Positions 237 through 46,261 of a DNA stretch of 64,000 bases are shown here, one piece after another (position 1 is the first letter of the stretch; each line of letters begins with the position of its first letter). Position numbers and translations under genes: made by a program. Location: positions 208,577 through 272,576 of the IMG/VR virus record IMGVR_UViG_3300023174_000042. One strand, given 5' to 3'. The notes under the pieces were generated by a model. That model saw only the letters and a list, made by a program, of their open reading frames with translations. It did not search any database and was not told the origin of the DNA.

Positions 237-272
237 TTTTTTTCTTTTTTTTTAATTAAACAATATTTTTTG

Positions 273-359
273 CGGTCTCGAAGGGAGTCGAACCCTCTTT
301 TTCGTTTACCTACTTGCTACCGTGACAGGGTAGTGCACCAACCATTATGCGCCGAGACC
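273..359 (-). tRNA. tRNA-Asp(GTC) with unusually long variable region
   Basis: Acceptor GGTCTCG/CGAGACC, anticodon arm CTACC-CTGTCAC-GGTAG, T arm GAGGG-TTCGACT-CCCTT, G73; no encoded CCA. Confidence 0.85.
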
Positions 360-364
360 AATTA

Positions 365-643
365 TTATATCAAAGCGTCCCATTCAGACACAATAAATTC
401 AAGTTTTAAAAGACCCTCAACTGAAATGTAGGTTACATGAAAACCTCCTGAAGCAACATCTGTTTCACTTTCTATTGCTTGAGTTAAAAGTTGTCTTGCT
501 TTTTCTCTAATTTCACCTTGACAAGGAATTTTTTCTTCACTACCTACCCATTCCCAACGAAGAGCTTTCATAGTTTTATGAACTTTTTCAAAGTCAAACC
601 AATCCATAATGTTGTCTATCGCTTTTCTTTGTTCTTCTGTCAT
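365..643 (-). CDS. hypothetical phage protein
   Basis: 92-aa ORF. Confidence 0.7.
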   Translation of the reverse strand: MTEEQRKAIDNIMDWFDFEKVHKTMKALRWEWVGSEEKIPCQGEIREKARQLLTQAIESETDVASGGFHVTYISVEGLLKLEFIVSEWDALI

Positions 644-666
644 GTTTTAAACATAATAATATTTTT

Positions 667-1137
667 TTATAATGATTGCACTTGTTCCATAATTTCTGAT
701 ACTTCATGAGGTTCTAAATAACCAATCACATCGTTTGTCACAGAAGTTTCATAAGTTAGTTTTCCATCTTTATCTAAAACAGCAACTTCAAACAAACCAT
801 CTTTACCACCGTAAGAAAATGTGTGAGACACAACACTAACACCAAATCCATTATCAAACTGTAGTCTTGCTTGTTTTCCAACCATGTGTGGAGCATCATC
901 AAGCATTTCAAATTCCAGATCTTCAAATTTTTTCATAACTTTTATTTTTTTTGTTTCTTTTAATACTGTTTTTGCACAAGCTTTGCCAAATGAAAATCCA
1001 CCTTGACTTTCATGATTTGTAGGAAAACTATTTGAGTCATAATAATTTCCGTCAGTTAAAGATAATTCTAACCAAACGGCAGTTTTTGGATTTATCTTGT
1101 CTCCACATTTTTCACAATAAATTATTTTGTCATTCAT
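667..1137 (-). CDS. hypothetical protein; N-terminal CxxC module in frame with a second module (possible internal start MKKFEDL at 936)
   Basis: ORF directly downstream of a Bacteroidetes-type promoter. Confidence 0.65.
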   Translation of the reverse strand: MNDKIIYCEKCGDKINPKTAVWLELSLTDGNYYDSNSFPTNHESQGGFSFGKACAKTVLKETKKIKVMKKFEDLEFEMLDDAPHMVGKQARLQFDNGFGVSVVSHTFSYGGKDGLFEVAVLDKDGKLTYETSVTNDVIGYLEPHEVSEIMEQVQSL

Positions 1138-1141
1138 TAAA

Positions 1142-1173
1142 CAAAGATAAATAGAATATTTTATACTATCAAA
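1142..1173 (-). promoter_or_regulatory. Bacteroidetes-type housekeeping promoter (-33 TTTG, -7 TATCTTTG)
   Basis: TTTG-N20-TATCTTTG 4 nt before ATG at 1137. Confidence 0.75.
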
Positions 1174-1208
1174 TTTTTTACAAAAAAAAATTTACAATTT
1201 AAGGTTTG

Positions 1209-1280
1209 TAGCCCATCCCGGTAACGCTCCGAGATTTGTTGGATGAAAACCAACTGTCCTTACTTTTAGACGAATGGGCC
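1209..1280 (-). tRNA. tRNA-Glu(TTC), non-canonical T loop
   Basis: Acceptor GGCCCAT/ATGGGCT, anticodon arm GTTGG-TTTTCAT-CCAAC, T arm CTCGG-AGCGTTA-CCGGG. Confidence 0.8.
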
Positions 1281-1286
1281 GTAAAT

Positions 1287-1349
1287 TAGGGTAGACACGG
1301 GCTTAGCTAGCCGTCTTTCAGGAAAAGCCCTTTTTCATATTCTACCCTA
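1287..1349 (-). ncRNA. putative structured RNA between tRNA-fMet and tRNA-Glu
   Basis: 9-bp outer stem TAGGGTAGA/TCTACCCTA enclosing 6-bp GGGCTT/AAGCCC stem; GC-rich in AT-rich context. Confidence 0.45.
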
Positions 1350-1353
1350 CTTG

Positions 1354-1426
<73 letters not shown>

Positions 1427-1431
1427 ATGTG

Positions 1432-1505
1432 TAGTTAATACTGGACTCGAACCAATGACCTATTCCGTATCAGGGAATCGCTCTAACCAACTGAGCTAAT
1501 TAACT
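1432..1505 (-). tRNA. tRNA-Ile(GAT)
   Basis: Canonical cloverleaf, ATTCC-CTGATAC-GGAAT. Confidence 0.92.
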
Positions 1506-1518
1506 ATTAATATTTTCG

Positions 1519-1599
1519 TACTGACGGTTGGATTCGAACCAACGTTTTCAACTTACCACTACAGGTATAGATGATATAAGCATCCACTGGTACGCCAGC
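1519..1599 (-). tRNA. atypical tRNA-like gene lacking D arm, UAU anticodon-like loop
   Basis: Acceptor GCTGGCG/CGTCAGT, T arm GTTGG-TTCGAAT-CCAAC, hairpin GGATG-CTTATAT-CATCT, long extra segment. Confidence 0.6.
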
Positions 1600-1606
1600 T
1601 TATTTG

Positions 1607-1678
1607 TGGTATGGGAGTGGATTCGAACCACCGGCACAAGTTTTTCACACTTTGCTCTACCTACTGAGCTACCACACC
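1607..1678 (-). tRNA. tRNA-Phe(GAA), slightly irregular anticodon stem
   Basis: GCTC/GAGC D stem, AAGT-GTGAAAA-ACTT, GGTGG-TTCGAAT-CCACT. Confidence 0.8.
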
Positions 1679-1685
1679 ATTTTTT

Positions 1686-1775
1686 TGTAATTAATAGTTG
1701 ATACACACTCTCGTTTCACCATCTTGTATCAACAGGTTAATGTACTTTACGAGTTTCCCTTTTCTTACAATCACA
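1686..1775 (-). ncRNA. putative structured RNA at head of tRNA cluster
   Basis: Closing stem TGTGATTG/TAATTACA, perfect 9-bp GTTGATACA/TGTATCAAC hairpin, possible CTCGT/ACGAG pseudoknot. Confidence 0.45.
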
Positions 1776-1858
1776 ATATTTTTAAATCAAAGAACTTTTT
1801 CCCTTTTGTGGTGGGGGTGAGACCACCATCACACTTTCTCACCCCCTTGTTTGTTATA

Positions 1859-1890
1859 CAAATATATGTAGTTTATTTTAAACTGACAAA
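1859..1890 (-). promoter_or_regulatory. Bacteroidetes-type promoter upstream of the tRNA cluster
   Basis: TTTG-N20-TATATTTG, followed by a 10-bp GC hairpin at 1813-1846. Confidence 0.7.
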
Positions 1891-1926
1891 TCTTTATTAA
1901 ACTTTTTTTTAATTTGTCTAAAAATA

Positions 1927-1957
1927 AAAAACCCCACCTCTTTTCGAAGATGGGGTC
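1927..1957 (-). terminator. intrinsic terminator
   Basis: ACCCC/GGGGT hairpin followed by T run on minus strand, downstream of ORF 1979-2728. Confidence 0.6.
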
Positions 1958-1978
1958 GTAAAAGGTCATAAATAAAAT

Positions 1979-2728
1979 TTAAATAACTTCTCTTGTGTCA
2001 ATATGTGCCTCATACATTAATCTTCTTGTTGATAAAGATCTGTAATAATAATAGTCTTCCAAAATAGACTCAAACAAACCGCTCACAAATCCTGATGCCG
2101 CATCCCAAGCATTTGAAAGTCCTTTCCCAACTGCCTGTGCCCCGCTTTGAATAGCGCTTCCTACCGCTTGAGCTCCTTTTTTAATTCCTTGTCCTACAGC
2201 TTGAACACCACCTTTAACAAAGTTGTATGCTTTATTCAACATGTTTCCTGCAAATTGTTTTACGTAAGACCAAAGTTCAGCAATTTTTGAGGCGGCGATA
2301 ACTGCGGCCCCCCAAGCGGCTTGTCCTAATTTCCATATGGCATCAAACATAGATTTAAAAAATTGTAATATGTTTGTAGATGCTTTACTGATAAAACTAG
2401 AAATTTGATTTGCGGTATATTTAATGGTTTGAGCGGCACCAATTACTATACCTTTAACTTGTTTTGCAAGTGCGGTTAAAAAACTCAAAATAACATTTCC
2501 AATTGCCTGTGCCACTTTAAAAGTAGCCTGACCAAGTTTAATTCCAACAATTGCAGGAAGAAAAATGATTGTCAATGAAATTTGACCAATTTTAATTACC
2601 GTTTGTTTGACAGCTTTACCAGCCTGAAAGCCAGCTTTGAATGCCGCGCTTTGGACATTTTGTTCTGAAATAACTTGTTTGATAACTTTTATCAAATCAT
2701 TTTCAGTTAATTTTATTACCTTTTTCAT
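1979..2728 (-). CDS. leader-bearing Ala/Gly-rich amphipathic helical protein
   Basis: N-term MKKVIKLTENDLIKVIKQVISE; GAQAVG repeats; TATTTAT upstream. Confidence 0.8.
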   Translation of the reverse strand: MKKVIKLTENDLIKVIKQVISEQNVQSAAFKAGFQAGKAVKQTVIKIGQISLTIIFLPAIVGIKLGQATFKVAQAIGNVILSFLTALAKQVKGIVIGAAQTIKYTANQISSFISKASTNILQFFKSMFDAIWKLGQAAWGAAVIAASKIAELWSYVKQFAGNMLNKAYNFVKGGVQAVGQGIKKGAQAVGSAIQSGAQAVGKGLSNAWDAASGFVSGLFESILEDYYYYRSLSTRRLMYEAHIDTREVI

Positions 2729-2784
2729 AACTTTTTTTATTTATAAATACATCGTAAGTTGAAAAAATTTTGCAAAAGAAAAAA

Positions 2785-3240
2785 TCATCGACAATGGTAA
2801 TCTGCAGCTCTTGTTGCGATTTGATTATCAGGTTTTATATTTGCCTTATAACCCAATGACGTAACCAATCCAACGGCAGGAGATACGAGTTTTGAACTAA
2901 AATGTTTTTCTTGTGAATTATAGTCCAAATCGATCTCAATTTTTACACTTATTTTACTTGACAACCAATTTGCGACCTCAACAGAATGTTCACATTCAGT
3001 CCAAAGACGTGTCCATTTATCTTTTATTTTTCTTACCTTTTGTTTATGATAAATGTAATGAACACCCCTGTTTCCAAATCTATATGCAATTGCTGTTACA
3101 TATACAGTATTTCTTCTGTGATTTTGTGAATCAGTTCCTATATGGATTTCTACATATGGACATTCTTTTAAAATATCAATTGTATGATTTACTATATCAA
3201 AAACAGCGTCTCCTTCTACTTTTTTAAATACCCTGTTCAT
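2785..3240 (-). CDS. RNase H-like YkuK family protein
   Basis: IHIGTDSQ motif, RLWxE, C-terminal AADY. Confidence 0.75.
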   Translation of the reverse strand: MNRVFKKVEGDAVFDIVNHTIDILKECPYVEIHIGTDSQNHRRNTVYVTAIAYRFGNRGVHYIYHKQKVRKIKDKWTRLWTECEHSVEVANWLSSKISVKIEIDLDYNSQEKHFSSKLVSPAVGLVTSLGYKANIKPDNQIATRAADYHCR

Positions 3241-3341
3241 AAATTGATTTGGGTGAGAAAATTCAAAATTTTATTATAATTTCTGTTGTATGAAATATTT
3301 GACTATCGATCACTCCTTTTATAAATAGTATTAACAAAATA

Positions 3342-3950
3342 CTAATAAACAAAATCAACAAAAAAATAAAAAATTCCATTGTCATAAAAAACACAAGTTG
3401 CCGCAATTGTGTTTGATTTATATCCTTTATCTAAAAAGTAAGTGTTATGTAATAAAGATCTTTGTGTACATCGGTGCATATATGATTTTTCCCAACACAT
3501 AATCATGTGATCTGCCAATTGTTCATATGTATCCATTTTATATGTCGTATACCCACAATTTTCACTTAGAGTTAATTTAAATCCTTTGTTATTTGTTGGG
3601 TAAACTTCATCTAAAAATAAAAATTGATTATTTTTATCACTCCACCAAGATGATCTATCAACATGAAATAATTTTTTTTGTTTTACATTTTCAAGGGCAT
3701 TTGGTAAAACAATAGTATCATATAAAAGTTCTGACCAAATAAGTTTCATCAACTGATTGTTATTTTCCAACATAGGCCAAGCGGATAAAAGATTTTTACC
3801 ATAACCAGTTGTAGTTATGGTGTCTCTGAAAGCGTTTAACTTGTCGAATAAAACTTTCGATGCGTGTTTAGAATCAAAATTGTTGTAGTCAATATTTTGT
3901 GAAAAAGAAATGTGACCAATAAAAAGAAGGATTGTTAGGATATTTTTCAT
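3342..3950 (-). CDS. secreted protein, possibly CAP/SCP-like
   Basis: Signal peptide; LNAFR...SENC...WEKSYMH pattern. Confidence 0.5.
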   Translation of the reverse strand: MKNILTILLFIGHISFSQNIDYNNFDSKHASKVLFDKLNAFRDTITTTGYGKNLLSAWPMLENNNQLMKLIWSELLYDTIVLPNALENVKQKKLFHVDRSSWWSDKNNQFLFLDEVYPTNNKGFKLTLSENCGYTTYKMDTYEQLADHMIMCWEKSYMHRCTQRSLLHNTYFLDKGYKSNTIAATCVFYDNGIFYFFVDFVY

Positions 3951-3967
3951 ATTACAAATAAAAAAAA

Positions 3968-4465
3968 TTATTTTACTTCAAAAGCACATCTCATAATTTT
4001 TTTTGTTTTAACAGAATCCTCGAAGTTTCCTATAACAACACCATCTTTGATTGTAAATGCGTGTTGTCTAACTAAAACAAAAAATGTACCTTTTGGGTTT
4101 TGTTTAATAAAAGTCCCAACGGTCATTTGTCTTAATTTGGTTTCACCTTTGATTGTAACATTATAAGACAAAGAATTAATCAATGTAGAACTTTTCCTTA
4201 CTCCAACTGTGTGAATTTTTTTATTATTGATTAATGTATTATTATCAACCATTTTTAAAAGTTTTGTTATAGTCCCAAAAGTTCCTTTTTTTGGTTTTCT
4301 TTGAAATTCTTTTGCGACATATTTGTGAGCGTCATCATAAGGAATTTCAAATGAAGATGCAAATGCTCTAACAACACAATCGTTTGTTTCTGATTTTGCG
4401 ATTACAGATTCAGAATATCCTTGAATCGCTTTTGATGTGGCTTCGTATGGGAGTTTGTTTTTCAT
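3968..4465 (-). CDS. conserved-looking phage protein (NDCVVRA...HAFTIKDG; possible Cys/His peptidase-like)
   Basis: Start reassigned to 4465, just after TATCTTTG promoter element. Confidence 0.6.
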   Translation of the reverse strand: MKNKLPYEATSKAIQGYSESVIAKSETNDCVVRAFASSFEIPYDDAHKYVAKEFQRKPKKGTFGTITKLLKMVDNNTLINNKKIHTVGVRKSSTLINSLSYNVTIKGETKLRQMTVGTFIKQNPKGTFFVLVRQHAFTIKDGVVIGNFEDSVKTKKIMRCAFEVK

Positions 4466-4597
4466 ACTACAAAGATACAAAAAATTTTTAAATCAAACCA
4501 TATTGGTGTAATTCATATAAAAATTTTTCATATTCCTCTGAGTTTATAAACTCTTCATGTAGTTGATAAAATATTTCTTCCATAATTTTAATATTTG

Positions 4598-4874
4598 TGA
4601 TCCCGAATGGATTCGAACCATTGACCTACTGCTTAGACATACCACTATAGTTTTCACTACCAACTTAATTGTTGTTTGTGGTCTGGACTTTCTCTTTACC
4701 TTATCTTTCGACTTAGGCACTCACCGTCAAGTCTCTACACCTTCTTCTTTTCAGAAGCTTGGCTCGGGATTACCATTTTACAGGCTTCCCCGAATTTGAT
4801 GAGTTCTATTTAATCGTTTCCAACTAAACGCCCCCTTTGAGGCAGTTGCTCTATTCCAGCTGAGCTACGGGACC
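4598..4874 (-). tRNA. tRNA-Arg(TCT) interrupted by group I intron
   Basis: Exons 4874-4840 and 4637-4598 splice to ACTGC-CT^TCT-AA-GCAGT with acceptor GGTCCCG/CGGGATC. Confidence 0.92.
4638..4839 (-). mobile_element. self-splicing group I intron (202 nt, no ORF)
   Basis: Inserted after U33; P1 with U-G wobble; AAATTCGGGGAA, AATCCCGAGCC, GTAGAGACTTGACGG, AAGAGAAAGTCC core elements; terminal G. Confidence 0.92.
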
Positions 4875-4889
4875 ATATTTTACATTTAG

Positions 4890-4974
4890 CAGAGGAGGAG
4901 GGATTCGAACCCCCGGATCCGTAAAGATCAACGGTTTTCAAGACCGCCTCATTCGACCGCTCTGACACTCCTCT
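4890..4974 (-). tRNA. tRNA-Ser(TGA)
   Basis: GCGGT-CTTGAAA-ACCGT, long variable arm, G73. Confidence 0.93.
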
Positions 4975-9613: not shown

Positions 9614-10117
9614 ATGAAAAATTTATTTTATTTATCGGTATTGGTTTTGGTTTTTTCATCTTGTATGAAATACGCAGAACCACAATTATTAAGTCTAAGT
9701 GGTGAGTATCGAATTGACAAAATTACTTATGAAAATAGAGATAACTCTGGTTTGAATCAGGTGTTTTATCCTGGTGATTTATATGTTAATCAAAGTGAAA
9801 CCAAACCTTTAGACTCAATTTCAGTCGGGTTTACTCGTATGGCGTTAGACTATTCTGTGATTTATTTTAATCCGATTGATGATCCAAGCACCGGATCAAC
9901 AACATGGACCAAAAAGTTCACATATACAATTCAAGGACACCATAGCGTTTATGATTTAGGATATATTGTATTTAATTACGACGGCACAAGACGTGTATGG
10001 AAAATTATCGATGATGGAACTGAAAGTCTTGTAATTAGAACTTCGGGAAGTTATGATTATGGAAACAGCACCAGTGGAGAAACAACCACAATGTATTTAA
10101 CTCGAGTTGGTCCTTAA
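9614..10117 (+). CDS. lipoprotein, lipocalin-like
   Basis: Lipobox FSSC; LSGEYRI; TATATTTG at 9591-9598. Confidence 0.7.
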   Translation: MKNLFYLSVLVLVFSSCMKYAEPQLLSLSGEYRIDKITYENRDNSGLNQVFYPGDLYVNQSETKPLDSISVGFTRMALDYSVIYFNPIDDPSTGSTTWTKKFTYTIQGHHSVYDLGYIVFNYDGTRRVWKIIDDGTESLVIRTSGSYDYGNSTSGETTTMYLTRVGP

Positions 10118-12398: not shown

Positions 12399-13367
12399 AT
12401 GAAAAAAAAATTTGATTTTGAAAATATAACCTTGATTCCAAATTATAGTTATGTAGAAAGTAGAAGTGAGTGCAAAACAACTATTAAATTTGGTCATTTA
12501 GAGTTTAAATTACCAATAGTTCCTTCAAATATGGAAAGTATTATAGATTCTAATTTGGCTATCAAATTGGCGAAAAACAATTATTTTTATATAATGCACA
12601 GATTTAACATAAACCCTGTTGAATTTACAAGTCAAATGCATCGTCTTGGTTTATATTCTTCAGTGTCTATTGGTGTTAATGAAGACTCTTACGAATATAT
12701 TAATCAATTTGTAGAGTTAGGTCTTTGTCCTGAATACATTACAATTGATATTGCTCATGGTCATTGTGTTAAGATGAAAAAAATGGTGAAATACATTAAA
12801 GAAAATTTACCAAATACATTTTTAATTGGTGGGAATGTTTCTACACCAGATGCGGTGGAAGATTTACAAAAGTGGGGTTGTGATGCGATCAAATGTGGTA
12901 TTGGTGGTGGATCGGCATGCACAACATACCATTCGACAGGTTTCGGAAATAGGGGATGGCAAGCAAATATGATTTTGGATTGTTCTAAAGTTTCAAAAGT
13001 TCCGATCATCGCCGATGGGTCAATTAAAGAACATTCCGACATTGTAAAAAGTTTGGTTTTAGGAGCAACTATGGTAATGGTTGGGGGAATGTTATCCGGT
13101 TATGTTGATTCACCTGGAGAGAAGGTTAAAAACTTGGTGGATGGTCTATGGTATAAAGAATTTTGGGGGAGTGCTTCATCATCACAATCAGGAAAAACAA
13201 ATAGAATCGAGGGTATTAGAAAATTAGTTCCATTCAAGGATTACTCAATATTCACCAAACTAACTCAAATTGAAGAATCTTTACAAAGTGCTATATCATA
13301 CGCAGGAGGGAATCACTCTAATTTAGAGTCTTTTAATAAGGTCGAATATTGTATTAAAATGAATTAA
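12399..13367 (+). CDS. guaC: GMP reductase
   Basis: SNMESII, ITIDIAHGH, GIGGGSACTT, IIADG, LQSAISYAGG. Confidence 0.9.
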   Translation: MKKKFDFENITLIPNYSYVESRSECKTTIKFGHLEFKLPIVPSNMESIIDSNLAIKLAKNNYFYIMHRFNINPVEFTSQMHRLGLYSSVSIGVNEDSYEYINQFVELGLCPEYITIDIAHGHCVKMKKMVKYIKENLPNTFLIGGNVSTPDAVEDLQKWGCDAIKCGIGGGSACTTYHSTGFGNRGWQANMILDCSKVSKVPIIADGSIKEHSDIVKSLVLGATMVMVGGMLSGYVDSPGEKVKNLVDGLWYKEFWGSASSSQSGKTNRIEGIRKLVPFKDYSIFTKLTQIEESLQSAISYAGGNHSNLESFNKVEYCIKMN

Positions 13368-15892: not shown

Positions 15893-18340
15893 TTATCTGA
15901 TAAGTGTGAAATTTCCTAAAAACTCTTTAACTTCATCAGTTTTAGGAGATTTAAACCTTAATTTCCAAGTATATATCCCATCTTGACACATAAAATTGTT
16001 ATAAGTCCCATCCCAACCTTCATAGGGATTAAAAGATTCCCAAATAATTTGACCCCAACGATTATAAATAACAAAAGTATAGTTAAAAATGTCCACACCA
16101 CTAGTAATTACTGGTTTAAGTATATTATTTCTTTCATCACCGTCAGGAGTAAAGGCATTTGGTATGTAAAATATTTCATTTGGACACAATTCTAAAGTAA
16201 TTGTAAAGTTTTCTGGGTTAGAAACACAACCATTATTCCATCTAACCCCTTGAAAAGTAAAAATTCCATCTGTATTCCATGTATGTGTTAATATATTTGA
16301 AGTAATTGTGTCTCCAAACACATACCATTGGTTAAAACCTCCCCCAACTGACGATAAATTAAAGAAATCTGTTAGAGTGTCTCCTTCACAAATTTGATGA
16401 TAAGTAAAATTTTGATCAGAAATACCGTTTGTAATTGGTAAAACACTTGGTCTTGGGTAAACTTGAACATGAATGGAATCAAAAAACCAACATCCCGATT
16501 GATTATACATGTAATAAACGGTATCAATACCAATAAATCCGTTATCAGGACAATATTGACTATTCCAAACATTCAAACCATTAAAAATTCCACCTTGAGG
16601 AGTTGCATTTAGGTTAATACAGTTATTGTATTCGCAAAACGGACCCATAGGTGTTATATTTGGTATAACATTTAAGTCGTAAATTGTAAAAGTTTGTGGT
16701 TGAGATTGACAACCCAACTGATTAACACCAATAACTGATAAAGTATTTGCGTAAAGTCCGCTATTTACACCTGAAACATTTAAGTTTATTGAATTTGGAG
16801 ATTGACCTAAAGTTATAACCCCAATTTGTGAAGTCCAATTATATGTTAAATTTAAAAAATTACTTGTAACGTTGTATAAATTACTTGTAGAATTGAAACA
16901 CACTGTATCAAATCCAGTTATTGGGTTGATTGTAACTTGTGGTGGGTTATTTAATGTTGTTGTTTGATTAGAAACACACCCATTTAGGTCAGTAACAACA
17001 ACAGAATAGTTTCCAAAACATAAATTAGTCGCTGTTTGTGTTGTTTGACCATTACTCCATAAATAAGTATAAGGAGCAAGACCACTTATAGGGTTAACTG
17101 TTGCAGATCCATTACAATCATTAAAACAAACAGGATCTGTTGGCGTAATTGTTGGTTGTTGTAATGGTGGTGGATTATTTAAAGTTGTTGCTCCATTATA
17201 AACACAGCCGGATCCATCAGTTAATGTAAATGTATAGTTTCCCGAACAAAGGTTATTTAAAGTTAATGTGTTTCCACCCATATTCCAAATAATATTAAAT
17301 GGTTGAGTCCCCCCAATAGGAGTAACAACAACAGATCCGTTGCAACCATTATTACACAAAGGATCAATTGGTGTAATTGTAGGGGGTGGTAAATTAGGGG
17401 TTAAAGTGACATGAATTGTGTCAGGACCTAACCCTACACCAACATTACAAACGGACCACCCAGCATTACAAGTTGGATATACAGGAATACAAGTATAATA
17501 CGCTCCTTGTGGTGGAGGATTTACAACTATTGATAAACCCGTTCCAATTGAATTAACATTTCCAACCTGAAACCACGTATAAGTCGGAGTTACAGTTGGT
17601 CCTTGTGGTGTATAACGATAAGAGTTATTAATTGTCGACCATTGTGTTGAATTTCTTCCTGGAACTGTAACTGCTGACGTTCCTAATAAATCGTGAATAC
17701 CTTGAACTGCGGTTCCTCCTGCCCACTGCGGACAATTTGGTTTATTTGCAATATGATTTTCAATAATGTTTGTTGATTCATATATTACAATATGAAATGT
17801 TCCTTGTAGATTAGTGCATGAAAACATTGGGACTCCGACCCAACTAACAACTAATTTTCTACAAGGAGCTGTTCCTGAAACTTGATATTTAATTTGACCT
17901 CCAAGACCAGGATTCCAATCTTGCCAAGGTCCCATAATACAATTTTTTGGTATTGTAATTCCAGCATTCGGAATAGACGCTGATGTAAAAGTTGTTGGCT
18001 GATTTGAACTAAATGAAATCCACCCATTAGACCCGATATAAAATTGATTATAAGTCTGACCATAAAAACAAAAATTAAAACCAATGTTAAATGGACCTGT
18101 TTGCGAATCATCGGTTAAAAAAACGTTTGTTCCTGTATTATTTTGAGCAACATAAGGGATATTTGTTACTCCGTAAGATGTGGTTTGTTTTGGTTGAGAT
18201 CCAGGTCCACACTGAGATAAGTCGGCCGTTAATGTTGTTTGATTTACACCACAAGGTAAAGTTAAATCAGGCCCTAAATACGGACAATACTGTGAGTATA
18301 TAAAAAGGGGAAACAAAAATAGAATTAATAATTTTTTCAT
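15893..18340 (-). CDS. secreted SprB-repeat protein with T9SS type-B (gliding motility-associated) C-terminal domain
   Basis: Signal peptide; PYTYLWSNGQTTQTATNL..GNYSVVVTD.NGC repeats; FYIPNAFTPDGD..N..IYNRWGQ..GWDGT..G.FTLIR. Confidence 0.88.
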   Translation of the reverse strand: MKKLLILFLFPLFIYSQYCPYLGPDLTLPCGVNQTTLTADLSQCGPGSQPKQTTSYGVTNIPYVAQNNTGTNVFLTDDSQTGPFNIGFNFCFYGQTYNQFYIGSNGWISFSSNQPTTFTSASIPNAGITIPKNCIMGPWQDWNPGLGGQIKYQVSGTAPCRKLVVSWVGVPMFSCTNLQGTFHIVIYESTNIIENHIANKPNCPQWAGGTAVQGIHDLLGTSAVTVPGRNSTQWSTINNSYRYTPQGPTVTPTYTWFQVGNVNSIGTGLSIVVNPPPQGAYYTCIPVYPTCNAGWSVCNVGVGLGPDTIHVTLTPNLPPPTITPIDPLCNNGCNGSVVVTPIGGTQPFNIIWNMGGNTLTLNNLCSGNYTFTLTDGSGCVYNGATTLNNPPPLQQPTITPTDPVCFNDCNGSATVNPISGLAPYTYLWSNGQTTQTATNLCFGNYSVVVTDLNGCVSNQTTTLNNPPQVTINPITGFDTVCFNSTSNLYNVTSNFLNLTYNWTSQIGVITLGQSPNSINLNVSGVNSGLYANTLSVIGVNQLGCQSQPQTFTIYDLNVIPNITPMGPFCEYNNCINLNATPQGGIFNGLNVWNSQYCPDNGFIGIDTVYYMYNQSGCWFFDSIHVQVYPRPSVLPITNGISDQNFTYHQICEGDTLTDFFNLSSVGGGFNQWYVFGDTITSNILTHTWNTDGIFTFQGVRWNNGCVSNPENFTITLELCPNEIFYIPNAFTPDGDERNNILKPVITSGVDIFNYTFVIYNRWGQIIWESFNPYEGWDGTYNNFMCQDGIYTWKLRFKSPKTDEVKEFLGNFTLIR

Positions 18341-18407: not shown

Positions 18408-18590
18408 TTACTTTGACTTCCATTCAAGATAAATAGTATGAATAACCATTAAATTAATCAATAAACAAAGAGAAGTTTCTAAAGCCCAATGCCAATTAAC
18501 TTGTGTCATTCCTAAATGAACCCCAAACCACATAAATGATCCGTATTTGTTCATTACTGTAATATAAAAGTATCTTAAAAAATTTTTCAT
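18408..18590 (-). CDS. small membrane protein
   Basis: 60 aa, TATTTAT upstream. Confidence 0.5.
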   Translation of the reverse strand: MKNFLRYFYITVMNKYGSFMWFGVHLGMTQVNWHWALETSLCLLINLMVIHTIYLEWKSK

Positions 18591-20073: not shown

Positions 20074-20925
20074 TTATTTTTTTTGAATTGAGATTTTATA
20101 TTTGTATTCGTTTGCTACACCCAAATTCAAATTTTTCGATTTTCCCCATTTTTTAATTATTTGTTCAAGTTCTGAAACATAAATTTCAGGAACTTTGGTG
20201 GCAACTCTAATTTGTTTTACATTAGTTGGATTTGGTGTTGGATTTGGAATTATATCATTTTTTTTAGGAGCATTTTTTTGATATAAATAACCAGGAGTTC
20301 TTGTATTGTCACCAATGTCACCTTTAGGGTCAATATCTATCATTTTAGTTCCTGAAATAACCATATTAACATTTTGTGCAGTTTCTGGATTATCAAAATT
20401 TGAAACTTTAGCGGTGCCTTTTACAATCTTTACGTTTGGTAAATTCAAACTATTTAAATATGCGACCATGTTGTCTCTTCTTTTTGCGGCTAACTCTTCA
20501 TTTTTTTTCTTAGCCTCAGGAGATCCTGCTTTGAAATTACCCCATTGTGTATCGGAACTTGATCCGTTCACTGTCACAGTTCCACCTCCTTGTTGATTTA
20601 TATTTCGGATTTGAAAAACCGCATCTTTAACTTTTTGTGAATTCGGGTCGATTTGATCTTGTCCCGATTTAAAATTGTTACTACCTTCAACTTTTATAAC
20701 TTGTGGAATACTTCCTTTTTTTCCTAAAGCTCTCATTCTATCCACACTACTCATAGAACTATTTGGATAATTTGCGTAATCTGTTGTAGTCATCAGAGGC
20801 CCTTTGTAATTTTTGTCGAACATATTTGTTTTATCATCTTCTGTTATTGATTTGCCAGACTTTTTAAACTCATGTAGGAGTAAAATTCTTTTTTTTTCGT
20901 AATTATCAACTTTTAAACTTTTCAT
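20074..20925 (-). CDS. leader-bearing protein with OmpA-like domain
   Basis: F.SG...I; VTVNGSSS; NEELAAKRRDNMVAYL. Confidence 0.6.
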   Translation of the reverse strand: MKSLKVDNYEKKRILLLHEFKKSGKSITEDDKTNMFDKNYKGPLMTTTDYANYPNSSMSSVDRMRALGKKGSIPQVIKVEGSNNFKSGQDQIDPNSQKVKDAVFQIRNINQQGGGTVTVNGSSSDTQWGNFKAGSPEAKKKNEELAAKRRDNMVAYLNSLNLPNVKIVKGTAKVSNFDNPETAQNVNMVISGTKMIDIDPKGDIGDNTRTPGYLYQKNAPKKNDIIPNPTPNPTNVKQIRVATKVPEIYVSELEQIIKKWGKSKNLNLGVANEYKYKISIQKK

Positions 20926-41093: not shown

Positions 41094-42548
41094 TTATACA
41101 GAATAAACAAACCTTTCATTTCCACAATTAAAAATTCTATAATATCCCAAAGTATTCATAATTTCCCGTTCAGTAAGTTTAGAATCATATCCCATTTTAA
41201 CTAATTTATGTTTTTGATAATTAATTCTATTTTTACGAACTTTATTTATGACATAACTATAGTTTGGTGGAGTAAAACCATGGGTTTCAAACCCTAACTT
41301 TTTATATAACTCCCCTGTTGCCCAAGAAATATCACAATAAGATAGGATTTTTTTTGGTTGATGATTGTTTAAAAAACATTTAAATAGTTTTGAAGCACCA
41401 CCAACAACAGAAATTCCAAGTTTATTACAAAATCTCACCAATTCATATTCACCTTCCTTTTGATTTTTATCTAATACTTTTCTAGTTTTCATAAATGTCA
41501 TCAAAGACACTAATTCACCTTCATAAAACAACCCATAATTAATATTAGTATTCACAAATCCTTGTAAATGGTTTTTATTTAGAAAATCCTTAATAACATG
41601 TTTTTCATCTATCTTCCTTATTGTTGTTTTTCTAGCAAAGATTTTTTTTGATTTTTTTATAACATTTGATATTATTGATTTTATAATGTCTAATTTGAAA
41701 TCAAAATCGTCTTCGTAAATGTGTATCAATTTGATGCCATATTTTTCACATAACTTTGTTTTTTCCAAATGATAATTTTTATTTACGTATAATTCTGAAT
41801 GCCATCTCATTCCATTGAATTCAAATCCCAATTTAAATTCTGGTAAATAGATATCAATTTCTTTTCTTTCGATTTTGAATGAATTAATTATTTCTCCATC
41901 ATAAATCTCTCCAATAATTTTATTTAATAAGACTTCTTTACCTGAAATGTTTTTTTCAACAGGTTTACACTTTGAACATAGTTCAGTTTTTATAATTTTT
42001 CTATTTGAAAATACAGATTTTTTAATTTTGGTTGGTCCGTGGATTTTACAATTAACGACAAAATTTTCTTCATCTTGATCAACAACATCAGGATTATTTT
42101 TTAAAAAAAGTTTAAAAATTGTTTCAACACGTTTTTGTTTTTCACTATTTAGGTTTTCAACTTTCCACTTGTTACTTTGCCTAAAATGCTCTGAACCCCA
42201 CTTTTTTAAAAAGGTTTTTTTGGTTTTTTCTTTAAAATTATCTGTTTTGAATACACACTTATCTCCGTATTTAAGTTCAAATGTTTTTTCTTTTTTGTTT
42301 TTTGAACATTTTGAAGAGCAAGTATAGTAACCCCCTTTATTTACAGATTGATTGTATCGTCGATATTGAATTTTTACTTCTTTGTTACAAACATCACATT
42401 TTGCATCAACAAGCAAATGACTTTTGGGATTTACTAATTCTATAGGTATTATATTAACTTCATTTAAAACTATATCAATATTGTTTTTTTTATAATATTG
42501 AGCAACATTCCCAACAATTCTAATTTTTAATTTTTTTGTTAAAAGCAT
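41094..42548 (-). CDS. putative free-standing endonuclease (Zn-binding repeats, PD-(D/E)XK/Vsr-like core, GNAT-like C-terminal domain)
   Basis: KCDVC, EIDIYLPEFKLGFEFNG..WHS, ELVRFC..GGASKLF. Confidence 0.7.
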   Translation of the reverse strand: MLLTKKLKIRIVGNVAQYYKKNNIDIVLNEVNIIPIELVNPKSHLLVDAKCDVCNKEVKIQYRRYNQSVNKGGYYTCSSKCSKNKKEKTFELKYGDKCVFKTDNFKEKTKKTFLKKWGSEHFRQSNKWKVENLNSEKQKRVETIFKLFLKNNPDVVDQDEENFVVNCKIHGPTKIKKSVFSNRKIIKTELCSKCKPVEKNISGKEVLLNKIIGEIYDGEIINSFKIERKEIDIYLPEFKLGFEFNGMRWHSELYVNKNYHLEKTKLCEKYGIKLIHIYEDDFDFKLDIIKSIISNVIKKSKKIFARKTTIRKIDEKHVIKDFLNKNHLQGFVNTNINYGLFYEGELVSLMTFMKTRKVLDKNQKEGEYELVRFCNKLGISVVGGASKLFKCFLNNHQPKKILSYCDISWATGELYKKLGFETHGFTPPNYSYVINKVRKNRINYQKHKLVKMGYDSKLTEREIMNTLGYYRIFNCGNERFVYSV

Positions 42549-42612
42549 GGTTAATATTTTTCTATAAATATAGTAAAATATTCATTTGTGTCCACCATTC
42601 AAGTTGATTTTT

Positions 42613-44202
42613 TTACCTATTTTCAGGTCTAAATCTATATGGATTGGCTTTGATTGCCGCTTTTGAAAAATAAGTCCCTTGTCCTTGTCGTCTGGCATTT
42701 TTTAATGATCTACCATATTCATTCATTTCGACTTCAAAATCAGGTTCGTAACGTTCATCATTTGATTGTTTAATTTTATCTCTTAAAGTTACAAAAAACT
42801 CCCTAGCCAATCTTTTCATGAATTTAACGTATTCAGCGTCTTCATCATCTTTTTTCTTATAGTATTTACTAACAGGAGGTCTTTTTGACCTATCTAAATA
42901 ACTTAAACCTGAAATATTAGTAATACATTTGTGTCCCCCACTGTTGGCTAAAATTAAATCCCAAGCAGATATTGTTATTTTGTCTAACACTTCACGTTGT
43001 TTATCTGTTAATGAATTAAATGGTTTTGACATAATAGAATCCAACATTTTGATATAAGAATCCGATCCTTCTTGTTTATCAAAAGAATTTGGATAAAGAG
43101 CCGTAAAGTCTTTTAATGTAAAACCAACAGATCCTTCACCAAAATCTTTGCTGTTTTCAGATATCCATTTAATTGTTGATAAAGGTATTTTTTTATTTTT
43201 TAATTCAGTTTCAAATTTCTTTAGAACTTCATCTTTAACTTCACCCAAATTAACACCTTTCAATGCTCTTTCTTTTTTAAATGGATTACAAGATGCTTGA
43301 ATCATTCCCATTGGCCAAACAAGAAGTAAAAAGTCTGCGTCAGGATTGTTTTTAAATGGTGTATAACGATCATAAGATCCTACGTCAAAAAGGTTACCTC
43401 CGCCATATTGAGTAATAATTCCATCAATTACCTTCACATTAGGAGAAGTTTTTTGTCTTTCAACATAAGATTCTTTATTTTTTTCTAATTGTTGTATATC
43501 CAAATAACCATTATTTTTCATCCAATCTTTAATATTTAAAAGAATATTCAAAAGTGAAGGTTTTGACTTCATTACAAGTTGTGTTAAAAAACCTTTCTTG
43601 TTTTTAAATGCCAATAGCAACTTGTTTGCCACAAGTCCCATCATTTTTTTATTTCCTTTAACATCTCTTTCTCGATCAATTTTGAATAAATAGTTCATGA
43701 CCTCACTTGGTGTTATATCATATTTAGCAAAATCTGCTGAGTCCACCATATTAATCAATTCAACATCTTCTTGAGTGAAAATATCTTTTGGTGATAATAC
43801 TTGAGAAATTGTTTCAACGTTAGATCTTGATGGTCTAAAACTTGTTGCGGTTCCACTTTCAACCCCTGCTTGTGTATCATGGTGATCGGTATGAATTACA
43901 TACATAGGTTTACCATGGGCAAAGTCAACCAAAACAGGCATAATTTCACCCTCACCTTCAGGTTTTTTTACAGCAAATTCTTTATCTCCATATTGTATTG
44001 TTTCAGCATCAACAACTTTAATTCCATTTTTTTCCAAATAGTCTTTCATAGCCAAGGCAGTTGTTACCCCATCTAAATCCATGTGAAAATAGATTTTAGC
44101 CATTTTATATCTTTTTGCTAGATCTTTGATACCTCTAATACCACTTTCATTCAATAATTTTGTGGTTTCTTCTTTTATTATTCGTCTTATTAAGTTTTTC
44201 AT
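42613..44202 (-). CDS. leader-bearing DHH-family phosphoesterase
   Basis: HMDLDG, VDF, TDHH, GGH; MKNLIRRIIKEE..LLNES leader. Confidence 0.8.
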   Translation of the reverse strand: MKNLIRRIIKEETTKLLNESGIRGIKDLAKRYKMAKIYFHMDLDGVTTALAMKDYLEKNGIKVVDAETIQYGDKEFAVKKPEGEGEIMPVLVDFAHGKPMYVIHTDHHDTQAGVESGTATSFRPSRSNVETISQVLSPKDIFTQEDVELINMVDSADFAKYDITPSEVMNYLFKIDRERDVKGNKKMMGLVANKLLLAFKNKKGFLTQLVMKSKPSLLNILLNIKDWMKNNGYLDIQQLEKNKESYVERQKTSPNVKVIDGIITQYGGGNLFDVGSYDRYTPFKNNPDADFLLLVWPMGMIQASCNPFKKERALKGVNLGEVKDEVLKKFETELKNKKIPLSTIKWISENSKDFGEGSVGFTLKDFTALYPNSFDKQEGSDSYIKMLDSIMSKPFNSLTDKQREVLDKITISAWDLILANSGGHKCITNISGLSYLDRSKRPPVSKYYKKKDDEDAEYVKFMKRLAREFFVTLRDKIKQSNDERYEPDFEVEMNEYGRSLKNARRQGQGTYFSKAAIKANPYRFRPENR

Positions 44203-44220
44203 TTATAATAAATATCTTAC

Positions 44221-45438
44221 TTAAACAAAAACTTGAGGAATATCATCCCAAGACGTTGTATATTTTTGTGTAATGTAATCTTGTTTCATTTCCCAATCAT
44301 GTGTTTGATTAACAGGAGACTTAATAATTTCAACCTGATCAAAAAATAATGACGTTTGAATAACGTTATCTGGTGTTAGTTCATTAAATACAATTCCACA
44401 TTTTTTATACTTTTCAGATTTATTACAAATTATTTTAAATTGTTCATATATCTGAGACCAAATTATATCAGCGTCTCTTGTTGGCGTTTGTAGTTTAATT
44501 ACTTTTGAATAATGATATTTATCTCCTTTATGATAATTACCTGACACAAATATTGTTGCTTTATTTGCCAACAATTTGTTTTGAGTTAATTTTTTTACAC
44601 CATTTTTAATATATGTATACATTGCTTCTCCAAGTTGATCAAACTCTGACACATCTTTTCCAAATGACCTTGTGGATGCAATATTTTTTTTAGGTTTTAG
44701 TGTTTTTAAAATTGGATAACAATATAACCCTTGAAGTTCTAATTGTGTTCTAATTCCATTTATATTCATTAATTTTTTTACAGTATATTCATGTGTGTTA
44801 ATAAATTGACCTACCGATTCTACTTCAATATTTTTTAGTTTTTTTGCCCATTTTCTTCCAATTCCCCAAACTTCATCAACGTCAATTTGATAACAAAGAC
44901 TTCTAAAGTTTTTAATATCCCAATAAGAACACACACCATTATAACTTGGTGATTTTTTTGCTAAATATGATGTGAGTTTTGCCAATGTTTTATTTGGTCC
45001 AACACCAATTGATACAGGAATACCTACTTTTCTTTTAACTTCTTCTTTAATTAACAAAAGTGTGTCATTTAGTTCTTCTTTTGGTATGTTTGAAAAATCA
45101 ACGAAAGCCTCATCAATCGAATATACTTCAATATCATTTCCAAACTCAGAGATTACTTTCATTACTCTATCAGACATATCACCATACAAATTGTAATTTG
45201 ATGAATACACACAAAATCTATGTTGATTCATAAATTCTCTACTTTGAAAAAATGGTTCTCCCATTTTAATTCCAAGGTCTTTTGCTTCTTGAGATCTAGC
45301 AATTACACACCCATCGTTGTTTGATAAAACAACCGTAGGTCTTCCAATCGATTCGGGATTAAATAATCTTTCACAACTAACATAAAAGTTGTTACAATCA
45401 ATAATTCCAATTTTTTTTAAGTTTTCTTTAATATCCAT
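44221..45438 (-). CDS. umuC: Y-family DNA polymerase V catalytic subunit
   Basis: IDCNNFYVSCER, VLSNNDGCVIARS, YSIDEAF, C-terminal WEMKQ..YTTSWDD. Confidence 0.92.
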   Translation of the reverse strand: MDIKENLKKIGIIDCNNFYVSCERLFNPESIGRPTVVLSNNDGCVIARSQEAKDLGIKMGEPFFQSREFMNQHRFCVYSSNYNLYGDMSDRVMKVISEFGNDIEVYSIDEAFVDFSNIPKEELNDTLLLIKEEVKRKVGIPVSIGVGPNKTLAKLTSYLAKKSPSYNGVCSYWDIKNFRSLCYQIDVDEVWGIGRKWAKKLKNIEVESVGQFINTHEYTVKKLMNINGIRTQLELQGLYCYPILKTLKPKKNIASTRSFGKDVSEFDQLGEAMYTYIKNGVKKLTQNKLLANKATIFVSGNYHKGDKYHYSKVIKLQTPTRDADIIWSQIYEQFKIICNKSEKYKKCGIVFNELTPDNVIQTSLFFDQVEIIKSPVNQTHDWEMKQDYITQKYTTSWDDIPQVFV

Positions 45439-45734: not shown

Positions 45735-45776
45735 ATACTAAAATATAGTAAATGTAAATGATAAAAAAAAGAATTT

Positions 45777-46127: not shown

Positions 46128-46261
46128 TTTATTGATATTATGTTTAATTTAATTGAATTTAAATTAATTTTGTATAGTTACAAGTTATAATTTTTGGTCT
46201 TATAAAAATATAGCATCAATAAAAGTTATTGAATGAAAAAAAATTTGATTATATTTGTATT

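What the first reader, a model, noticed from the sequence alone, without database searches (positions are those of the whole stretch)
15893..18340. Phage-encoded substrate of the host type IX secretion system
Seen: signal peptide, SprB-like repeats and an intact type-B CTD. Established: such CTDs route Bacteroidetes proteins through T9SS to the surface, usually with a PorP/SprF partner; none is visible here. Inference: the phage decorates the infected cell surface or jams T9SS/gliding machinery, e.g. for receptor masking or superinfection exclusion.
Basis: partly seen in the sequence, partly recalled or inferred. Interest (0 to 1): 0.62.

Follow-up and report, generated by a model that had tools for sequence, protein, structure and literature searches.

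The report
Jumbo-phage adhesin exported by host T9SS
A 272-kb freshwater jumbo phage carries a conserved gene for a stalked adhesin-like protein bearing the signals that Bacteroidota cells use to export proteins to their surface, so the phage probably changes the surface of the cell it infects; what that achieves is untested.

Summary
Window 15893-18340 (-) is an intact 815-aa ORF with a Sec signal peptide, two SprB repeats, a PKD-like domain and a type-B T9SS sorting domain above curated cut-offs.

It is a phage gene, not host contamination. The window ends a 272.6-kb IMG/VR virus record that has major head, portal, terminase and baseplate genes. The gene sits in conserved synteny in relatives of 266-283 kb. 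All 59 viral copies form one clade nested among Bacteroidota homologs.

Selection keeps both export signals: dN/dS is 0.19 for the sorting domain, and 59 of 59 viral copies keep the signal peptide.

No PorP/SprF partner gene exists anywhere in the phage, but this is normal for the family. The phage sorting domain belongs to the "orphan" type-B subclass, which in Flavobacterium johnsoniae shares a host shuttle protein and rides the gliding machinery (PMC12618676).

The same phage also encodes a type-A T9SS cargo.

Phage T9SS cargo was noted before (PMC7468147, PMC6949934), so this is a new variant of a known kind. Secretion and function are untested.

The parts
15893..18340 (-). Whole gene: 815-aa phage-encoded type-B T9SS cargo (P0001); stop codon at 15893-15895
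   Evidence: ORF; domains; more than 120 full-length homologs at 51-97% identity; full-length model is all-beta, pLDDT 82.5
18290..18340 (-). Signal peptide, residues 1-17 (basic start, hydrophobic run, ...YSQ); predicted cleavage leaves Gln17 first
   Evidence: Read from the sequence; the same pattern in 59/59 viral copies; Q17 at least 90% conserved; dN/dS 0.25
17396..18289 (-). Head domain, residues 18-315: cysteine-rich all-beta module (Ig-like subdomain plus a beta-sandwich core), no Pfam family, possibly distantly NIDO-like
   Evidence: No Pfam hit even at E 10; model pLDDT 89.1, pTM 0.84; no PDB relative for the core; Atlas matches to viral and Bacteroidota CHU_C clusters; NIDO leads; most conserved region, 111/293 invariant, dN/dS 0.16
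16946..17383 (-). Two SprB repeats, residues ~320-465
   Evidence: PF13573, 58.1 bits, two stretches; genome search places at G000 225618-225728 and 225849-225953; two beta modules in the model
16670..16945 (-). PKD-like domain, residues ~466-557
   Evidence: PF19408 PKD_6, 25.5 bits against cut-off 25; beta module in the model
16175..16669 (-). Two further all-beta stalk modules, residues ~558-722, no Pfam family
   Evidence: No Pfam hit; strands at 585-718 with pLDDT 82-91
15896..16174 (-). Type-B T9SS C-terminal sorting domain, residues ~723-815, of the orphan subclass
   Evidence: TIGR04131 and CHU_C above cut-off; dN/dS 0.19; the 14 nearest CTDs in a Crocinitomicaceae genome are all orphans
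18408..18590 (-). Small 60-aa hydrophobic ORF just upstream on the same strand; a 60-64-aa ORF holds this position in relatives. Whether it belongs to the system is uncertain
   Evidence: ORF list; called genes of 60 and 64 aa at the same place in L015 and L016
18651..19076 (+). Divergently transcribed FKBP-type peptidyl-prolyl isomerase, a syntenic neighbour; no functional link shown
   Evidence: PF00254, 76.8 bits; conserved next to the gene in L014-L016

Best explanation
This is a genuine, vertically inherited gene of a freshwater jumbo phage of Bacteroidota, probably of Flavobacteriales and possibly of Crocinitomicaceae. It encodes a stalked adhesin-like protein that the infected cell exports. 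Proposed steps: (1) the signal peptide sends the protein through Sec, and signal peptidase I cuts before Gln17 (inferred from sequence); (2) the C-terminal type-B domain is recognised by the host type IX secretion system (inferred from family membership and purifying selection); (3) because the domain is of the orphan subclass, a shared host PorP/SprF-like shuttle takes it from the translocon, so the phage needs no partner gene (inferred by analogy with F. johnsoniae Fjoh_1123/1720/4934 and shuttle Fjoh_1677); (4) the protein stays on the cell surface bound to that shuttle, possibly loaded on the gliding track as those orphans are, with the conserved ~300-aa head held out on about five Ig-like modules (inferred from the model and the analogy); (5) the head binds a conserved ligand, so the phage changes what the infected cell sticks to or how it glides. 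My estimates: about 0.75 that it is a T9SS-exported surface protein. Given that, about 0.4 that it acts as an adhesin in trans (attachment or gliding of the infected cell) and about 0.25 that it masks receptors or blocks superinfection.
For: Phage origin: IMG/VR virus record of 272,576 bp, CheckV 93%; major head, portal and large terminase; baseplate wedge, RNR and DnaB; no integrase; same gene order in relatives of 266,582 and 283,131 bp; viral loci share this phage's flanking genes while MAG loci share none beyond weak hits to two repeat-rich ORFs. Export signals: domains above cut-offs; signal peptide in 59/59 viral copies; dN/dS 0.16-0.26 in all regions, 0.19 for the CTD. Orphan route: no PorP/SprF in the phage or beside 78 of 80 bacterial homologs; five bacterial genomes with homologs hold 5-21 PorP/SprF genes each; G001 has 47 type-B CTDs against 21 shuttles; the 14 G001 CTDs nearest the phage CTD are all orphans, about 4e-4 by chance; precedent in PMC12618676 and PMC9143113. 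Adhesin build: all-beta head plus stalk plus CTD. The phage uses T9SS more than once: a second cargo with a type-A CTD, with a homolog lying right after the type-B gene in L132. Breadth: 188 viral loci; present in 5/5 related large phage genomes, one with terminal repeats, and in a 634-kb GenBank phage. Possible transcription: RNA-library contigs of 425, 514 and 165 nt on the gene, none on the flanks.
Against: No experiment shows secretion, surface display or any phenotype. The host is unknown. The complex prediction of the CTD with three candidate host shuttles gave no verdict. Shuttle recognition is highly specific in F. johnsoniae, and the phage CTD is only 35-53% identical to the nearest bacterial orphans. 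The RNA evidence comes from assembled contigs in runs chosen by this gene, and DNA carry-over is not excluded. Ten of 59 viral copies fail my strict CTD motif pattern. In some relatives the gene lies within 6 kb of the major head gene. The dN/dS values pool non-independent pairs.
Confidence: 0.62

Rival explanations
1. Superinfection exclusion or receptor masking: the exported protein competes with host type-B adhesins for the shared shuttle or gliding track, or binds host surface receptors in cis. Later phages, or progeny from lysed neighbours, then cannot adsorb.
For: It relies on the same export evidence as the best explanation. T9SS and gliding genes are repeatedly the targets of phage-resistance mutations in Flavobacterium (PMC9804748 and bioRxiv 2020.10.02.323337, by their titles and abstracts). 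That makes T9SS-delivered surface proteins plausible receptors. The orphan-class CTD would share a shuttle with many host cargoes.
Against: The head domain is the most conserved part (dN/dS 0.16, 111/293 invariant), whereas simple jamming would need only the CTD. The head has no paralog in this phage's tail-fibre-like genes, so it is not an obvious mimic of a receptor-binding protein. No adsorption data exist.
Confidence: 0.2
2. Virion component: an Ig-like decoration or fibre protein, with the signal peptide and CTD as leftovers from a captured host gene.
For: Two other ORFs of this phage near the baseplate gene carry SprB repeats. In some relatives the gene lies near the major head gene. T9SS-domain ORFs next to head genes were noted in gut phages (PMC6949934). 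Ig-like domains of phage Hoc and tail proteins appear among the weak fold matches.
Against: A Sec signal peptide is kept in 59/59 viral copies and is under purifying selection, as is the CTD. Export to the periplasm does not fit cytoplasmic virion assembly. In this phage the gene lies about 33 kb from the head module and 138 kb from the baseplate. The tail-region SprB proteins share only weak repeat similarity, and the family search found no type-B CTD in them.
Confidence: 0.06
3. Host contamination or assembly chimera: the region is bacterial DNA attached to, or inserted in, a viral contig.
For: Full-length bacterial orthologs exist at 56-57% identity in Crocinitomicaceae chromosomes. JGI names the family 'gliding motility-associated-like protein'.
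Against: GC content is low across the window, 0.25-0.35. The same flanking phage genes appear in many independent assemblies from different samples. The gene is 48 kb from the contig end with phage-type genes on both sides. Viral copies form one clade. DNA contigs from two studies span the gene's junctions.
Confidence: 0.02
4. A secreted or surface enzyme, or nutrient-binding protein, acting as an auxiliary metabolic gene. The head domain degrades or captures a polymer to feed the infected cell, as proposed for the type-A glycoside hydrolase cargoes of Cryophage.
For: Invariant Asp, Glu, His and Trp residues occur in the head. T9SS cargoes are often hydrolases (PMC11205867 abstract). Bellas et al. 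found hydrolase cargo in a phage.
Against: No enzyme family matches by Pfam, NCBIfam or PHROGs. Fold matches are Ig, PKD and FN3-type binding modules only. The nearest labelled relatives are NIDO and IgGFc-binding-like adhesion modules. Type-B CTDs characteristically anchor adhesins.
Confidence: 0.07

Closest known systems
Orphan type-B CTD substrates of Flavobacterium johnsoniae (Fjoh_1123, Fjoh_1720, Fjoh_4934) and their shared shuttle Fjoh_1677 (PMC12618676)
   Same: Sec signal peptide plus a TIGR04131 type-B CTD; no porP/sprF-like gene next to the cargo gene. The phage CTD clusters with the orphan CTDs of a Crocinitomicaceae genome, as the three F. johnsoniae orphans cluster with each other (more than 44% identity).
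   Different: It is encoded by a phage, not the cell. Orthology to the F. johnsoniae proteins was not tested because their sequences were not at hand. The shuttle in the unknown host is not identified. Loading onto the gliding track is assumed by analogy only.
SprB, the gliding adhesin of F. johnsoniae, with its shuttle SprF
   Same: SprB-type repeats (PF13573) and a type-B CTD; a surface adhesin held by a PorP-like protein (PMC9143113).
   Different: Only two SprB repeats in 815 aa, whereas SprB is a giant repetitive protein (from memory). No adjacent sprF. The N-terminal head is a different domain. It is not an SprB ortholog.
Cryophage T9SS cargo proteins (Bellas et al. 2020, PMC7468147) and T9SS-domain ORFs in gut crAss-BACON phage contigs (de Jonge et al. 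2019, PMC6949934)
   Same: Phage genes carrying T9SS sorting domains, presumed to use the host secretion system.
   Different: Those are type-A CTDs on hydrolase, PA14 or BACON proteins, and are highly variable between phage variants. This one is type B, routed by a PorP-like shuttle rather than PorV. It is conserved and monophyletic across jumbo and huge phages. This phage also has a type-A cargo.
Chromosomal orthologs in freshwater Crocinitomicaceae (L018, JBILRE010000002.1; P0109)
   Same: Same length and architecture, 56-57% identity over the full length. Also orphan, with the nearest PorP/SprF gene about 60 kb away on the same contig.
   Different: They sit beside enolase, carA, rpoA and the ribosomal operon. 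They fall inside the viral clade in the quick tree, so the direction of transfer is unresolved.
PG1035-PorP-PorE complex of Porphyromonas gingivalis (PMC9143113)
   Same: A type-B CTD protein anchored on the cell surface by binding PorP, without A-LPS modification.
   Different: No PorE-like or PorP-like gene accompanies the phage gene. The cargo domains are unrelated.

Membership tests
T9SS type-B CTD cargo (TIGR04131 / PF13585 CHU_C) | C-terminal domain matching the type-B model above the curated cut-off and ending at the protein's C-terminus | tested here: met
   TIGR04131 38.7 bits (cut-off 35), residues 726-815; 42.9 bits in the genome search; PF13585 45.4 bits (cut-off 27)
T9SS type-B CTD cargo (TIGR04131 / PF13585 CHU_C) | N-terminal Sec signal peptide | tested here: met
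   Judged by sequence heuristic only, with no dedicated predictor: basic n-region, hydrophobic h-region and ...S/G/A/T-Q at the junction in the window protein and in 59/59 viral homologs
T9SS type-B CTD cargo (TIGR04131 / PF13585 CHU_C) | Cognate PorP/SprF-like shuttle gene directly downstream (typical, but absent for orphan substrates) | tested here: not met
   None in the 272-kb genome. Orphan substrates are a recognised exception (PMC12618676), and the phage CTD groups with orphans
T9SS type-B CTD cargo (TIGR04131 / PF13585 CHU_C) | Five conserved motifs A-E in the last 100 residues, each needed for secretion (Paillat et al. 2025) | tested here: inconclusive
   The motif sequences are only in a figure that is not held. 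The HMM match covers positions 3-85 of 85, and the blocks P-N-x-F-T-P, N-R-W-G, W-D-G and the terminal R are present, but my mapping of these onto A-E rests on memory
T9SS type-B CTD cargo (TIGR04131 / PF13585 CHU_C) | Secretion depends on a functional T9SS in the producing cell | not testable with these tools
   Needs expression in wild-type and T9SS-null strains. The host is unknown. Bacterial genomes with homologs hold 5-21 PorP/SprF genes each
SprB gliding adhesin (ortholog) | Very large protein made mostly of SprB repeats, with sprF downstream | tested here: not met
   815 aa with two SprB repeats; no sprF
NIDO domain (PF06119) for the head | Match to the Pfam model above threshold | tested here: inconclusive
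   No hit for the window protein even at E 10. 10 of 85 homologs hit weakly, best E 0.0024. Atlas feature hit to a NIDO cluster at 0.85
Phage virion Ig-like decoration or fibre protein | Made in the cytoplasm (no signal peptide) and assembled into particles; gene in a structural module | tested here: not met
   Signal peptide conserved in 59/59 copies. No PHROG family. In this phage the gene lies outside the head and baseplate modules.
Phage-encoded T9SS cargo in the sense of Bellas et al. 2020 | Gene on a bona fide phage genome carrying a T9SS sorting domain | tested here: met
   Phage hallmark genes; type-B CTD on P0001; type-A CTD on P0122 in the same genome

The most novel reading that the evidence does not exclude
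A whole lineage of freshwater jumbo and huge phages keeps a cargo set for the host type IX secretion system: an orphan-class type-B adhesin, often with a type-A cargo. The adhesin is loaded onto the host's gliding machinery, so the phage steers where the infected cell attaches or glides, for example toward particles or uninfected hosts, and so raises its own transmission. That would be viral control of host motility and adhesion through the host's own adhesin conveyor.
Probability: 0.2. Interest if true: 0.8.

Novelty: new variant of a known kind. Interest (0 to 1): 0.56.

Why it matters
Phages are known to carry metabolic genes and superinfection-exclusion genes. Very little is known about phages using the Bacteroidota-specific type IX secretion system to place their own proteins on the host surface. 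Here the cargo is not a one-off capture. It is conserved, under purifying selection, monophyletic in phages and present in genomes from 166 kb to 634 kb, in freshwater metagenomes of at least ten studies. It therefore marks a stable phage strategy. It also gives a simple marker tying these uncultured jumbo phages to T9SS-bearing Bacteroidota, and possibly to Crocinitomicaceae. The orphan-CTD finding explains how a phage can use a secretion route that normally needs a dedicated partner gene. It also offers a defined test: fuse a reporter to the CTD and express it in Flavobacterium with and without T9SS or the orphan shuttle.

Tried and rejected
Complex prediction of the phage CTD (residues 716-815) with three orphan PorP/SprF-like shuttles of the Crocinitomicaceae genome G001 gave score 0.00 and no verdict. 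It counts neither for nor against binding.

Foldseek against PDB gave no match at E <= 0.001 for the head. VIA-align gave only generic Ig, PKD and FN3 matches of 75-102 residues at Z <= 7.5, not covering the core.

PHROGs has no family for the protein. Pfam finds nothing for residues 18-300 or 550-730 even at E 10.

Megablast of 20 kb of the window against GenBank phages found nothing. Pfam Terminase_6C found nothing, although PHROGs then identified the terminase.

An unbiased estimate of how many related phages carry the gene failed. The baseplate gene recruited at least 590 viral contigs, but the 80 kept are fragments that cannot span both loci.

The careful tree search did not finish in time, so the quick IQ-TREE result is what I cite.

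I looked at the 310-nt upstream region for a Bacteroidetes-type promoter and saw no clear match, so I did not pursue it.

Rejected readings: host contamination; virion component; the head as a copy of a tail-fibre domain, since there is no paralog in the genome.

The large all-against-all protein search was not used, because the word search and family scans had already settled the family.

Full report
**1. The observation**

Window 15893-18340 (minus strand) is one open frame of 815 codons.
- Pfam finds SprB repeats (58.1 bits, cut-off 28, two stretches), a PKD_6 domain (25.5 bits, cut-off 25) and CHU_C at residues 726-807 (45.4 bits, cut-off 27).
- NCBIfam TIGR04131, the model that defines type-B T9SS sorting domains, scores 38.7 bits against a cut-off of 35 and runs to the last residue.
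- The N-terminus has a basic start, a hydrophobic run and ...YSQ followed by YCP, which looks like a signal peptidase I site leaving Gln first. This is read from the sequence; no dedicated predictor was available.

**2. Phage or host?**

The window is the last 64 kb of an IMG/VR virus record of 272,576 bp that CheckV rates 93% complete.
- The genome has a major head protein (PHROG 138, E 3e-66), a portal (3e-64), a large terminase (6.5e-42) and a DNA polymerase.
- It also has a baseplate wedge protein, ribonucleotide reductase and a DnaB-type helicase.
- The window holds six tRNA genes. The genome has no integrase.
- GC content is 0.25-0.35 across the window.

Proteins 70-75% identical to this one lie on contigs of 266,582 and 283,131 bp from other samples, in the same gene order: FKBP isomerase, small ORF, this gene, a 218-aa ORF, a 97-aa ORF, and further on an IMPDH-like gene. 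Among 160 fetched loci, the 80 from bacterial MAGs share no flanking genes with this phage beyond weak hits to its two repeat-rich ORFs at 13697 and 70544, and have GC 0.33-0.55. Nearly all viral loci share several of its genes and have GC 0.28-0.39. Host contamination is excluded.

**3. Distribution and history**

- The word search found more than 120 full-length homologs at 51-97% identity with the same architecture.
- Pattern scans found 188 viral loci and 273 bacterial loci. The bacterial ones are all labelled Bacteroidota apart from a few bins whose labels look wrong.
- Most bacterial hits share only the head domain, at 50-60% identity, on longer proteins of about 1,040-1,430 aa.
- In a quick maximum-likelihood tree of the head domain (106 rows), all 59 viral rows fall in one clade with SH-aLRT 99, nested among Bacteroidota clades.
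- Only two bacterial rows lie inside the viral clade. They are sister sequences from Crocinitomicaceae chromosomes, lying beside enolase, carA, rpoA and the ribosomal operon. The starred branches do not rule out that this pair is instead the sister of all viral copies, so donor and recipient are unresolved. Either way the link points to Crocinitomicaceae or Flavobacteriales as the host lineage.
- Within phages the gene occupies at least five different neighbourhoods.
- It is present in all five related large genomes I checked (166-436 kb, one with direct terminal repeats). This set was recruited through the gene itself, so it is biased.
- A 634-kb GenBank "uncultured phage" has a 732-aa homolog with signal peptide, head (58% identity) and intact CTD.
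- Near-identical DNA occurs in freshwater, lake and pond metagenomes of ten studies.

**4. Are the export signals functional in phages?**

- Across 32 full-length viral copies, pooled Nei-Gojobori dN/dS is 0.25 for the signal peptide, 0.16 for the head, 0.26 for the SprB repeats, 0.21 for PKD, 0.23 for the remaining stalk and 0.19 for the CTD. The pairs are not independent, but no region looks relaxed.
- All 59 distinct viral copies keep a basic and hydrophobic N-terminus followed by Gln, one residue, then Cys-Pro. 49 of 59 match a strict pattern for the canonical CTD blocks.
- A protein sent through Sec cannot be assembled into virions in the cytoplasm. This argues against the virion-component rival, even though two tail-region ORFs of this phage also carry SprB repeats and the gene sits near the major head gene in some relatives.

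**5. The missing PorP/SprF partner**

- Pfam PF11751 finds nothing in the phage.
- An HMM I built from 18 PorP/SprF genes of five bacterial genomes finds nothing in the phage or in any viral locus. Among 80 bacterial homolog loci it hits only two, both on the opposite strand. Absence of a partner is therefore the rule for this family.
- The bacteria supply many shuttles: 5-21 PorP/SprF genes per genome.
- In the Crocinitomicaceae genome G001 there are 47 type-B CTD matches against 21 PorP/SprF genes. Of the 40 CTDs I compared, 14 have a shuttle gene directly downstream.
- Ranked against those 40 CTDs, the phage CTD's 14 nearest (35-53% identity) are all orphans. The chance of that is about 4e-4.
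- Paillat et al. [quoted passage not shown] Substrates in operons with PorE-like genes are anchored statically (PMC12618676).
- Gorasia et al. 2022 showed that type-B proteins stay on the surface bound to PorP-like proteins (PMC9143113).

By analogy, the phage cargo needs only the host's generalist shuttle. That is why a phage can carry the cargo gene alone.

**6. What the protein looks like**

- The head model (residues 1-320, 85-sequence alignment) has pLDDT 89.1 and pTM 0.84 and is all-beta.
- PDB searches match only an Ig-like subdomain. The core has no solved relative.
- In the ESM Atlas the same fold heads clusters that are 98-100% viral with CHU_C, PKD_6 or SprB, and Bacteroidota "CHU large protein" clusters.
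- A NIDO-like relationship is only a lead: Atlas feature score 0.85, and weak Pfam hits in 10 of 85 homologs.
- The full-length model (pLDDT 82.5) shows the head, about five Ig-like modules and the CTD in a row. This is the build of a stalked surface adhesin with its binding end farthest from the anchor.
- The head has no paralog elsewhere in the phage.

**7. A second cargo**

Outside the window, at genome 13,697-17,734, a 1,345-aa ORF has a similar signal peptide ending ...YSQ, an Ig_7 domain and a type-A sorting domain (PF18962 36.8 bits, cut-off 27; TIGR04183 34.2 bits, cut-off 23). A homolog lies directly after the type-B gene in the related viral contig L132. Three of the five related large phages have type-A ORFs. 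Use of the host T9SS by this phage group is therefore not a single accident.

**8. Expression**

Two freshwater metatranscriptome runs hold contigs of 425, 514 and 165 nt on the gene at 97-99% identity, and none on the flanking genes. DNA runs cover the whole stretch. This is consistent with transcription but not proof. The data are assembled contigs, the runs were found with this gene, and the conserved part of the gene recruits related phages, since DNA depth is 2-3 times higher there.

**9. Prior knowledge and novelty**

Phage ORFs with T9SS sorting domains were noted in gut phage contigs (PMC6949934). [quoted passage not shown] I found no report of type-B cargo in phages, or of T9SS cargo in jumbo or huge phages, within the searched library. 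The library is not exhaustive.

The finding is thus a new variant of a known kind: a different sorting class and route, conserved rather than variable, and monophyletic in a widespread phage group.

**10. Verdict**

The claim of a phage-encoded T9SS substrate is well supported by sequence, synteny, phylogeny and selection. The purpose is open. I favour an adhesin that changes attachment or gliding of the infected cell, because the head is the most constrained part. Receptor masking or superinfection exclusion is the main rival. It is plausible because T9SS and gliding genes are recurrent targets of phage-resistance mutations in Flavobacterium. The complex prediction gave no verdict and is not used as evidence.

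Noticed in passing
G000:C1:13697-17734 (-), outside the window (L196:3700-7734, P0122): Second T9SS cargo in the same phage: 1,345 aa, signal peptide ending ...YSQ, Ig_7 domain and a type-A Por_Secre_tail CTD above cut-offs. A homolog (62% over residues 19-485) lies directly after the type-B gene in viral contig L132. Three of five related large phages have type-A ORFs.
   Followed up: partly
G000:C1:67208-69283 (-) and 70544-72730 (-), outside the window (L010): Two long ORFs (691 and 728 aa) in the run of giant ORFs next to the baseplate-J gene carry SprB repeats. The family search found no type-B CTD in them. They are probably tail-fibre or baseplate-associated proteins built from the same repeat type.
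   Followed up: partly
window 18408-18590 (-): A 60-aa hydrophobic ORF directly upstream of the cargo gene on the same strand. An ORF of 60-64 aa holds the same position in relatives L015 and L016. Function unknown.
   Followed up: no
window 9614-10117 (+) (G000 218190-218693): A 167-aa ORF whose N-terminus looks like a lipoprotein signal (hydrophobic run ending ...SSC). It is conserved at 66-88% in related phages, so it is another possible envelope-targeted phage protein.
   Followed up: no
window 272-4974 (-): Six tRNA genes (Asp, Glu, Met, Ile, Phe, Ser) clustered near the start of the window.
   Followed up: no
window 41094-47536: A cluster of DNA-repair-type genes: a homing/HNH endonuclease-like ORF (PHROG 3339, E 3e-100), a DinB/Pol IV-type polymerase (IMS domains) and a UvrC-like GIY-YIG plus RNase H-domain ORF.
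   Followed up: no
window 12399-13367 (+) and G000:C1:23856-25079 (-): Metabolic-type genes in the phage: an IMPDH/GMP-reductase-family ORF (181 bits), syntenic in L014 and L015, and a glutamine-synthetase-like ORF.
   Followed up: no
window 20074-20925 (-): A 283-aa ORF with a sub-threshold OmpA-like (peptidoglycan-binding) match, 22 bits against a cut-off of 27.2.
   Followed up: no
window 16618-18300: In metagenome contigs of two DNA runs, summed depth is 2-3 times higher over the head and SprB part of the gene than over its flanks. The conserved part probably recruits contigs of several co-occurring related phages.
   Followed up: no
L022, L030, L045 (genome contigs): Homologs sit on MAG contigs labelled Candidatus Competibacteraceae (Pseudomonadota) and 'uncultured Akkermansia'. 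These lineages are not expected to have a T9SS, so the contigs are probably mis-binned or mislabelled.
   Followed up: no
G008 (IMGVR_UViG_3300042261_002385, 436,265 bp; L151): IMG/VR classes this record as a provirus. Besides the 817-aa homolog it holds a 198-aa ORF with a type-B CTD and a 1,732-aa type-A ORF about 2 kb apart. Host flanks may be included.
   Followed up: no
L239-L318 (viral contigs): The baseplate-J gene of this phage recruits at least 590 IMG/VR contigs, and the 80 kept are 79-100% identical. This phage group is therefore very common in the sampled metagenomes.
   Followed up: no
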